A stretch of 64,000 nucleotides of DNA from Octopus bimaculoides (lineage: Eukaryota). Position numbers and translations under genes: made by a program. Numbering within the stretch: the stretch's first letter is position 1; each line of letters starts with the position of its first letter. Positions 56,328 through 56,897 of this stretch are shown here, one piece after another. Location of the stretch: positions 41,652,210 to 41,716,209 of the forward strand of contig NC_068994.1 in assembly GCF_001194135.2 (NCBI RefSeq), given 5' to 3'. The notes below the pieces were generated by a model. It ran no database searches and was not told the DNA's origin. It was given only the letters and a program-made list of their open reading frames with translations.

Positions 56328-56897
56328 CAATATTTCTGTTGGAACCAGGGCAGTGAGCTGGTGGGATCATTAGTACACTGGGCAAAATGCTTAAAGGTAT
56401 TTTGTTCATCTTTATGTTCTGAGTTCAAATTCCACCGAAGCTGACTTTGCCTTTCATCCTTTTGGGGTCAATAAAATAAGTATCAGCTGAGCAATGGGGT
56501 TGAGCTAAATGACTTAATCCCTTTCTTGAATGTGCTCACCTTGTGCCAAAATTTGAAATCAATATTTCTGTTGGAATCAAGGAGGTGAAATGACAGAGTT
56601 GGTAGGCCAGGGAAAATGCTTAGCGACATTTCATCCGTCTTTATGTTTTGAGTTCAAATTCTGCCAAGGTCGACTTTGCCTTTCATCCTTTCAGGGTCGA
56701 TAAAATAAGTACCAGCTGAGCAGTGGGGTCAGTCTAATCGACCTACTCCCTACCTTGAACTTGCAGGTCTTACACTAAAATTTACAATCAATACTTCTGT
56801 TGGAACCAAGATGGCAAACTGTCAGACTCATTATCGCTGGGCAAAATGCTTAGTGGTATTTCATGTCTTTATGAAGACAATATTTCTGTTGGAACCT
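56328..56897 (+). mobile_element. Array DR-SINE-DR-SINE-DR-truncated SINE-DR with 20-bp direct repeats
   Basis: CAATATTTCTGTTGGAACCA (at most 1 mismatch) at 56328, 56560, 56789 and 56878, with SINE-A bodies between them (units of 232, 229 and 89 bp). Confidence 0.88.

What the first reader, a model, noticed from the sequence alone, without database searches (positions are those of the whole stretch)
56328..56897. CRISPR-like geometry built from a SINE: four near-identical 20-bp direct repeats separating three divergent SINE-A copies
Seen: DR CAATATTTCTGTTGGAACCA at 56328 (exact), 56560, 56789 and 56878 (1 mismatch each). The two full SINE bodies differ by roughly 20% or more by eye, and the third is 3'-truncated. 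The DR length equals the TSD at 41390. Inference: either repeated retrotransposition into exactly the same unique site, each event re-duplicating the target (a site-specific hot spot outside microsatellites), or an old tandem amplification whose junction is unusually conserved. Copies 1 and 2 share a CAGCTGAGCA variant, so duplication is not excluded. Either way, the DR is more conserved than what it flanks.
Basis: partly seen in the sequence, partly recalled or inferred. Interest (0 to 1): 0.75.

Follow-up and report, generated by a model that had tools for sequence, protein, structure and literature searches.

The report
Old tandem SINE array sharing one TSD
Three head-to-tail copies of a very abundant short retroposon (SINE) are flanked and separated by the same 19-base target-site duplication; this layout is already described in other molluscs, and nothing suggests it is CRISPR-like or functional.

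Summary
The four 20-mers are real and lie at the stated coordinates. The structure is TSD-(SINE-TSD)3 with a period of about 230 nt.

Read pile-ups dissect the repeat. Bases 1-6 (CAATAT) are the canonical 3' end of this SINE subfamily. Bases 7-19 (TTCTGTTGGAACC) are single-copy target DNA. Base 20 is the first base of the SINE, so the "mismatch" in the fourth repeat is not a substitution.

Unit 3 is not 3'-truncated. It keeps its tail end and has lost about 138 nt internally.

All junctions are identical in three individuals. Most of the structure is also found in three sister species about 4% diverged, so the array is old and fixed. No transcription was seen on its unique parts.

The repeat is better conserved than the SINE head and tail. 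It is not better conserved than the SINE core, which holds a perfect 20-mer shared by units 1 and 2.

The best explanation (about 0.57) is one retrotransposition followed soon by unequal exchange or slippage between its TSDs. Serial re-insertion into the regenerated target (about 0.3) is not excluded. TSD1-(SINE-TSD1)n arrays are already described in a clam. Interest is low.

The parts
56328..56346 (+). TSD copy 1, CAATATTTCTGTTGGAACC. It is the left end of the array, and the sequence to its left is not SINE.
   Evidence: family D3. Single-copy depth.
56347..56565 (+). SINE unit 1, full length, with the A2-type tail. Its last 6 nt (CAATAT) overlap TSD copy 2.
   Evidence: nhmmer match to model positions 3-212, alignment, tail end mapped by read pile-up.
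56560..56578 (+). TSD copy 2, CAATATTTCTGTTGGAATC, with one C>T substitution.
   Evidence: Read depth falls from about 485 reads to single copy between 56565 and 56577.
56579..56794 (+). SINE unit 2, full length. It has a 3-nt deletion in the head and a heavily mutated A2 tail that is unique in the genome.
   Evidence: Tail 56758-56788 is at single-copy depth.
56789..56807 (+). TSD copy 3, CAATACTTCTGTTGGAACC, with one T>C substitution in the SINE-tail part. It is identical in sister species B and C, and in the RNA-run contig of D.
56808..56883 (+). SINE unit 3. It has a 5' part of 66 nt (56808-56873) joined at a TG microhomology to its own tail remnant TGAAGACAATAT (56872-56883). About 138 nt are deleted internally.
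   Evidence: loose ends behind 56871-56873; family D3, 91%.
56878..56896 (+). TSD copy 4, CAATATTTCTGTTGGAACC, exact. It is the right end of the array and is followed by single-copy flank.
56037..56178 (-). Neighbouring 5'-truncated SINE with the other (A1) tail type, in inverted orientation. It is not part of the array, but it is 86% complementary to unit 2 over 98 nt.
   Evidence: pairs I1, I2.

Best explanation
One A2-subfamily SINE RNA was inserted by target-primed reverse transcription at ...ACACC|CAATATTTCTGTTGGAACC|TACC.... The 3' end of the RNA (CAATAT) paired with the identical hexamer of the target. A staggered cut of about 19 nt produced TSD-SINE-TSD.

Soon afterwards, while most CpGs were still intact, unequal exchange or replication slippage between the two identical TSDs duplicated the SINE+TSD unit. 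Ordinary unequal crossing-over between the new 230-nt repeats then added a third unit. The array became fixed.

Its units have since decayed independently. CpG decay is nearly saturated, there are many G/C>A/T changes in the GC-rich head and tail, and unit 3 lost about 138 nt. The AT-rich, CpG-free TSD and the SINE core changed little.

Shown: the anatomy, the single-copy status of the spacer, fixation, age, and independent CpG decay. Inferred: the duplication step and its timing.
For: - The same 19-nt TSD, with identical boundaries, occurs four times.
- All three units are 5'-complete and end at the same tail base. At least seven of roughly 30 SINE matches in the window start deep inside the model, which I read as 5'-truncated.
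- Units 1 and 2 pair as sister tips.
- They carry the most rare shared derived states of 243 copy pairs, 5 against a mean of 0.8. They share 7 derived sites against 0-4 in other A2 pairs.
- The 13-nt spacer core is single copy, so there is no genome-wide target class.
- The junctions are identical in 3 individuals, and most of the structure is present in sister species.
- The same TSD1-(SINE-TSD1)n structure, with unequal recombination between TSDs as its proposed origin, is described in a bivalve (PMC11481361).
- Conservation of the repeat is matched by blocks inside the SINE core.
Against: - Units 1 and 2 (21% non-CpG divergence) are no closer to each other than to an unrelated A2 copy 55 kb away (20-21%).
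- Of the 16 informative CpGs of the 18 in the consensus, at least 11 were still intact when the units separated. I tallied this by hand from the table and ran no separate computation for it. Both duplications would therefore have to be very early.
- Divergence is strongly uneven. Between units 1 and 2 it is 4/67 in the core against 31/102 in head plus tail (P=8e-5). Uniform neutral decay after duplication does not predict this.
- The units differ at two sites that are roughly 50/50 polymorphic in the family, the Y of GAAAYCA and the site at 56854.
- The TSD shows 2 substitutions where about 8 are expected from the whole-body rate (P=0.015).
Confidence: 0.57

Rival explanations
1. Serial retrotransposition. 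Two further A2 SINE RNAs inserted independently into a regenerated copy of the same target. They were guided by the perfect 6-nt match between the target's CAATAT and the SINE 3' end, and by a near-constant stagger of about 19 nt. Each event would re-create the TSD.
For: - The TSDs of other A2 copies also begin with a match to the SINE 3' end and are 17-20 nt long: c41411, c44515, and the array at 870-1528.
- SINEs in this window habitually insert head-to-tail next to resident copies. At least two clusters (44515-44929, 52567-52981) pair a full-length A1-tail copy with a 5'-truncated A2-tail copy, which duplication cannot produce, and two larger clusters look similar.
- All three units separated while their CpGs were intact and are as diverged as random family members.
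- They differ at common family polymorphisms.
- The low divergence of the TSD and core would then date the insertions, and the head/tail differences would be source differences.
Against: - It requires three hits with identical first and second nicks at a site whose 13-nt core is unique in the genome.
- All three copies are 5'-complete.
- The head and tail variants of units 2 and 3 are private. Depth is single copy, with no sibling copies. Source heterogeneity therefore does not explain them.
- Units 1 and 2 share rare variants.
Confidence: 0.3
2. The 19-20-mer, alone or together with the SINE core, is kept by selection because it functions. Candidate functions are a protein-binding site or a processed small RNA, in a CRISPR-like or piRNA-cluster-like way.
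For: - The TSD has fewer substitutions than the whole-body rate predicts (P=0.015).
- No differences were seen in TSD copies 3 and 4 in sister species.
Against: - The repeat is no better conserved than the SINE core.
- With about 2-4% species divergence, only about 1 change is expected in 38 nt, so the species comparison has no power.
- No RNA reads lie on the unique parts in three RNA runs of the same species.
- There are no Rfam or tRNA hits.
- The 13-mer is single copy, so it is not a recurrent motif.
Confidence: 0.04
3. The array is an assembly artefact, or the 20-mer is simply part of a dispersed SINE subfamily tail.
For: The first 6 bases (CAATAT) are indeed the subfamily's 3' end, present on roughly 10^3 closely similar copies.
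Against: - Independent short-read contigs from three individuals cross junctions 1-3 without a difference, and one crosses junction 4. Sister-species contigs cover three junctions fully and the first one partly.
- Depth over bases 7-19 falls to single copy.
Confidence: 0.02

Closest known systems
[quoted passage not shown]
   Same: - Head-to-tail units of one SINE family.
- Every unit ends at the same tail position.
- The same TSD flanks the array and separates the units.
- It occurs in a mollusc.
- The proposed origin is unequal recombination between TSDs.
   Different: - Those arrays are described as 'highly similar' units. Here the units are old, 73-75% identical, with near-saturated CpG decay.
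- The array here has only 3 units.
- It is shared with sister species.
- The TSD overlaps the SINE 3' end by 6 nt.
Double-insertion model for tandem transposable-element dimers and satellite birth.
   Same: Re-insertion into a duplicated target site gives element-TSD-element arrays, which unequal exchange can then expand.
   Different: - As I recall it, that model rests mainly on elements with strong insertion-site preference. I did not re-read the paper.
- Here the element is a LINE-mobilised SINE.
- Its only demonstrated target preference is 4-6 nt of homology to its own 3' end.
SINE pile-ups in microsatellite or A-rich tails of resident copies
   Same: The same window shows this for the ATT-tailed subfamily. 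The units sit in the same orientation, head to tail.
   Different: In those clusters the linkers are variable microsatellite, and the units differ in truncation and subfamily. Here the linker is an exact copy of unique target DNA.
CRISPR arrays
   Same: Short, near-identical direct repeats at regular spacing.
   Different: - The 'spacers' are homologous to one another, being one SINE.
- The repeat is a target-site duplication.
- The genome is eukaryotic.
- There is no transcription or processing signal.

Membership tests
TSD-(SINE-TSD)n tandem SINE array | Same-orientation, head-to-tail copies of one SINE family | tested here: met
   nhmmer matches at 56349-56558, 56580-56780 and 56809-56873, all on the + strand. 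The 229-nt period is 75% identical.
TSD-(SINE-TSD)n tandem SINE array | One and the same TSD flanks the array and separates every unit | tested here: met
   There are four copies of the 19-mer carrying 2 substitutions in total.
TSD-(SINE-TSD)n tandem SINE array | The spacer is non-SINE target DNA, not part of the element | tested here: met
   Bases 7-19 drop to single-copy depth. Bases 1-6 and base 20 belong to the SINE.
TSD-(SINE-TSD)n tandem SINE array | Units derive from one insertion, forming a private clade | tested here: inconclusive
   Units 1 and 2 are sister tips, but with 45% bootstrap. They share 7 derived sites against 0-4 in other pairs. They are nevertheless as diverged from each other as from the dispersed copy c870. 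Only about 25 background copies were available.
SINE (LINE-dependent short retroposon) | Short, non-coding, very high copy number and dispersed, with 5'-truncated copies and TSDs | tested here: met
   About 30 matches to a 212-position SINE model lie in 64 kb. Read pile-ups are huge. TSDs of 17-19 nt are present.
SINE (LINE-dependent short retroposon) | [quoted passage not shown] | tested here: inconclusive
   ARAGORN and Rfam find nothing at the locus. ARAGORN also finds nothing on my consensus. A B-box-like GAGTTCAAATTCC is visible by eye only.
SINE (LINE-dependent short retroposon) | 3' tail shared with a partner LINE | not tested
Site-specific retrotransposon target (R1/R2-like) | The target sequence recurs in the genome and is repeatedly occupied | tested here: not met
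   The 13-nt core is at single-copy depth in organism A, and the junction bins are at or close to single-copy depth in three sister species.
CRISPR array | Spacers are unrelated to each other and acquired from foreign DNA; cas genes; prokaryotic host | tested here: not met
   The spacers are homologous SINE copies. The genomic context is a SINE-rich eukaryotic genome.
Copy-number-variable minisatellite | Alleles with different unit numbers among individuals | tested here: inconclusive
   Junction contigs are identical in 3 individuals, and the listed joints contain no TSD-to-TSD skip. Contigs can hide rare alleles.

The most novel reading that the evidence does not exclude
The A2 SINE and its LINE partner choose targets by pairing the RNA's 3' hexamer (CAWTAT) with the DNA, and cut with a nearly fixed stagger of about 19 nt. 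An insertion would then regenerate its own preferred target and could be re-hit. Arrays would grow by serial retrotransposition rather than by recombination, a self-seeding hot spot outside microsatellites.
Probability: 0.3. Interest if true: 0.45.

Novelty: new member of a known kind. Interest (0 to 1): 0.22.

Why it matters
The finding matters mainly as a cleanly dissected example of how a single SINE insertion can seed a tandem repeat. It also shows how misleading apparent spacer conservation can be when CpG-rich repeat bodies decay much faster than an AT-rich, CpG-free TSD.

One useful by-product concerns target choice. In this genome the TSDs of the A2 subfamily start with a match to the element's own 3' end and are about 17-20 nt long. 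That constrains the integration mechanism of the unknown LINE partner and is testable genome-wide.

Nothing suggests a host function.

Tried and rejected
- Tandem Repeats Finder does not see the array, because the units are too diverged.
- ARAGORN and Rfam give no hit at the locus. ARAGORN also gives none on the SINE consensus.
- I looked for a genome-wide subfamily matching the unusual head of unit 3, whose CTGTCAGACTCAT is shared with copy c8898. Depth over 56809-56833 is single copy, so none was detected.
- I tested whether the tail of unit 2 evolves faster between species. It shows 3 differences in 46 nt against 3 in 190 nt elsewhere. This is not significant, and several differences could not be placed.
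- I used c41411's perfect 18-nt TSD as a calibrator for TSD decay against body decay. I set it aside because it lies inside a local AGATTATAAT-type repeat.
- I checked whether the arrays at 870-1528 and 22892-23330 are segmental duplicates, because their linkers look alike. The alignment is ambiguous, and the exact linker occurs only once at <=3 mismatches.
- RNA evidence is negative. The three organism A RNA runs show nothing on the unique bins, and one organism D run gives only a single contig at depth 2.4.
- The Albertin 2015 octopus genome paper is not held in the library.
- The left half of TSD copy 1 could not be confirmed in the sister species. Only a 91-nt contig of organism B, starting at 56338, covers that junction.

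Full report
OBSERVATION. The 20-mer CAATATTTCTGTTGGAACCA occurs at 56328 (exact) and at 56560, 56789 and 56878 (one mismatch each). It occurs nowhere else in the 64-kb window at up to 3 mismatches, and 0.01 matches are expected by chance. Start-to-start spacing is 232, 229 and 89 nt. A gap-free repeat search recovers a 229-nt period at 75% identity and a 23-nt family with four members. Tandem Repeats Finder misses the array because the units are too diverged.

WHAT LIES BETWEEN THE REPEATS. An HMM built from window copies finds about 30 copies of one SINE of about 215 nt in the 64 kb. Three of them are at 56349-56558, 56580-56780 and 56809-56873, all on the + strand.

The family has two alternative 3' modules.
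- 'A1' ends ...GGCCTTGTGCCTATAGTAGAAAGGATT(ATT)n.
- 'A2' ends ...GCTGGCCTTGTGCCAAAATTTGAAAYCAWTAT.

Units 1 and 2 carry the A2 tail.

I could not name the organism, because run labels are coded. The SINE resembles what I remember from octopod genomes, but that is a lead and not a test.

ARAGORN and Rfam find nothing at the locus, and ARAGORN finds nothing on my consensus. A tRNA origin is therefore not demonstrated here. Only a B-box-like GAGTTCAAATTCC is visible.

ANATOMY OF THE REPEAT. I laid raw reads and contigs on 56526-56600. The genome-wide pile-up on the A2 tail is about 485 raw reads at roughly 0.7x coverage.
- It stays at near-full depth through 56564.
- It falls over 56565-56573.
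- It reaches single copy by 56577.
- The reads that leave diverge into unrelated AT-rich flanks.

Bases 1-6 of the repeat (CAATAT) are therefore the SINE's own 3' end.

The last base (A) is the first base of the SINE. Most of the full-length window copies start AAGG. The A>T 'mismatch' of the fourth repeat is thus not a substitution.

The true target-site duplication is the 19-mer CAATATTTCTGTTGGAACC. Its 13-nt core, TTCTGTTGGAACC, is single-copy DNA. The first copy has no SINE to its left, so the empty site already contained CAATAT. This is the microhomology expected when the 3' end of the RNA pairs with the nicked target in target-primed reverse transcription.

Other A2 copies show the same rule.
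- c41411 has an 18/18 TSD starting ATAT directly after GAAACCT.
- c44515 has a TSD of about 17-18 nt starting [T]ATTAT.
- In the array at 870-1528, a CAATAT lies exactly 19 nt upstream of the first head.

UNIT 3. It is not 3'-truncated. TGAAGACAATAT at 56872-56883 corresponds to the tail end TGAAATCAATAT, and the 23-nt repeat family scores it 91%. Reads from other SINE copies leave unit 3 at 56871-56873 and continue with GTTCTGAGTTCAAATTC. Unit 3 is a full unit that lost about 138 nt between two TG dinucleotides. The structure is therefore TSD-(SINE-TSD)3.

REALITY, FIXATION AND AGE. Short-read contigs from three individuals of the same species cross junctions 1, 2 and 3 without a single difference. 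A 305-nt contig crosses junction 4.

Three differently labelled, closely related organisms hold orthologous contigs.
- Organism B covers 56688-57000 with 12 differences and no gaps. It also covers 56461-56567, and 56338-56400 with 1 difference.
- Organism C covers 56702-57017 with 11 differences.
- Organism D covers 56547-56658 with 7 differences, and 56844-57001 with 4 differences.

The array, including the deletion in unit 3 and the T>C in TSD copy 3, predates a split of about 2-4% divergence. The left half of TSD copy 1 could not be confirmed in the other species.

RNA runs of the same species show no reads on the unique parts. One contig at depth 2.4 appears in organism D.

IS THE REPEAT UNUSUALLY CONSERVED? 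Units 1 and 2 differ at 55 of 201 aligned body positions. With the CpG-rich consensus seen in the read pile-ups, 34-36 positions are CpG and these are 81-95% decayed. At non-CpG sites the units differ at 35/169 positions, or 21%.

Half of that, as a per-lineage rate, predicts about 7.9 substitutions in the four 19-mers. Two are seen (P=0.015).

The divergence is very uneven, however. It is 13/47 in the head, 4/67 in the core and 18/55 in the tail (P=8e-5). Against the core rate, the TSD is unremarkable (P=0.6).

In the u1/u2 alignment, 12 of 193 internal 20-nt windows have <=1 mismatch. One of them, GACTTTGCCTTTCATCCTTT, is perfect. The repeat is therefore better kept than the adjacent head and tail, which are GC-rich and CpG-rich and change mostly by G/C>A/T. 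It is not better kept than the SINE core.

I cannot fully explain the excess change in head and tail. Those variants are private, at single-copy depth. Master-copy heterogeneity is therefore not a sufficient explanation.

DUPLICATION OR SERIAL INSERTION?

In favour of one insertion followed by duplication:
- TSD boundaries are identical in all four copies.
- All units are 5'-complete and end at the same tail base.
- Units 1 and 2 are sister tips in a neighbour-joining tree, though with 45% bootstrap.
- They have the most rare shared states of 243 pairs.
- They share 7 derived sites against 0-4 for other A2 pairs.
- The spacer core is unique in the genome, so it is not a target class.
- The same TSD1-(SINE-TSD1)n structure has been described in a clam and attributed to unequal recombination between TSDs (PMC11481361).

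In favour of serial insertion:
- Units 1 and 2 are no closer to each other (21%) than to the dispersed copy c870 (20-21%).
- I compared CpG decay outcomes by hand from the table. Six of the 16 informative CpGs decayed to different products in the two units, and five are intact in only one. The units therefore separated when at least 11 of 16 CpGs were intact. Unit 3 gives the same star-like picture.
- The units differ at two common family polymorphisms.
- This window shows that SINEs habitually insert next to resident copies. At least two clusters pair units that differ in tail type and truncation.
- A2 TSDs have a similar length of about 17-20 nt and start with the 3'-end match. A re-hit could therefore regenerate the same TSD.

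Weighing these, I put early TSD-mediated duplication at about 0.57 and serial insertion at about 0.30. Selection on the repeat and artefact together come to well under 0.1. The rest is left unassigned.

COMPARISON AND VERDICT. This is a TSD-(SINE-TSD)n tandem SINE array, which is a known kind. It is old, fixed and decayed. The CRISPR analogy is geometric only, because the 'spacers' are homologous SINE copies and the 'repeat' is a target-site duplication fused to SINE ends. Novelty: a new member of a known kind. Interest is low.

The one point worth a genome-wide follow-up is the target rule of the A2 subfamily, meaning 3'-end microhomology plus a long, near-constant stagger. The related question is whether that rule allows self-seeding re-insertion.

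Noticed in passing
55887-56017: A 131-nt MITE-like element with perfect 28-nt terminal inverted repeats (ATACAGGGTGTCCACAAAGTCTGGGTAC). It has a very high copy number in the read pile-ups.
   Followed up: partly
56037-56178 (-) versus 56416-56522 and 56645-56742 (+): An inverted 5'-truncated SINE lies about 150 nt upstream of the array. It is 86% complementary to unit 2 over 98 nt and 78% complementary to unit 1 over 107 nt. It could form a long hairpin if co-transcribed. No transcription of the locus was seen.
   Followed up: partly
56187-56320: The left flank of the array is itself a moderately repeated, unidentified sequence, at tens to a few hundred times single-copy depth at >=85% likeness in four related genomes.
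   Followed up: no
870-1528 (-), 21869-23330 (+), 44515-44929 (-), 52567-52981 (+): Head-to-tail SINE clusters lie in or next to (ATT)n microsatellites. Their units differ in tail type (A1 or A2) and in 5' truncation. They therefore look like serial insertions into the tails of resident copies rather than duplications.
   Followed up: partly
41392-41409 and 41553-41570; 44644-44680; 1529-1547: TSDs of A2-tail SINE copies are about 17-20 nt long and begin with a match to the SINE's own 3' end (CAWTAT). This suggests priming by 3'-end microhomology and a long, fairly constant stagger.
   Followed up: partly
41300-41640: The SINE at 41411-41550 sits inside a local repeat of AGATTATAAT-like motifs with palindromic parts. 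Its perfect 18-nt TSD may be partly pre-existing repeat.
   Followed up: no
56877: The window has A where the three sister organisms have C. The ancestral tail remnant of unit 3 was therefore TGAAGCCAATAT, the C variant of the family's GAAAYCA polymorphism. Units 1 and 2 carry T.
   Followed up: yes
1302-1331 (-) and 23103-23132 (+): Two SINE-SINE linkers in different arrays are nearly the same: GGATTTTTATCATTATTATCATTACTAAGG, against the same sequence with one extra ATT. They could mark a dimeric SINE unit or an old segmental duplication. The alignment of the two arrays was ambiguous.
   Followed up: partly
SINE copies window-wide (table): In most copies the core (model positions 70-146) is less diverged from consensus than the head and tail. 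Units 1 and 2 are the extreme case, with the core at 3-6% and the tail at 20-28%. The cause is unexplained. Candidates are a conserved central domain at the source level, ectopic gene conversion, and context-dependent mutation.
   Followed up: partly
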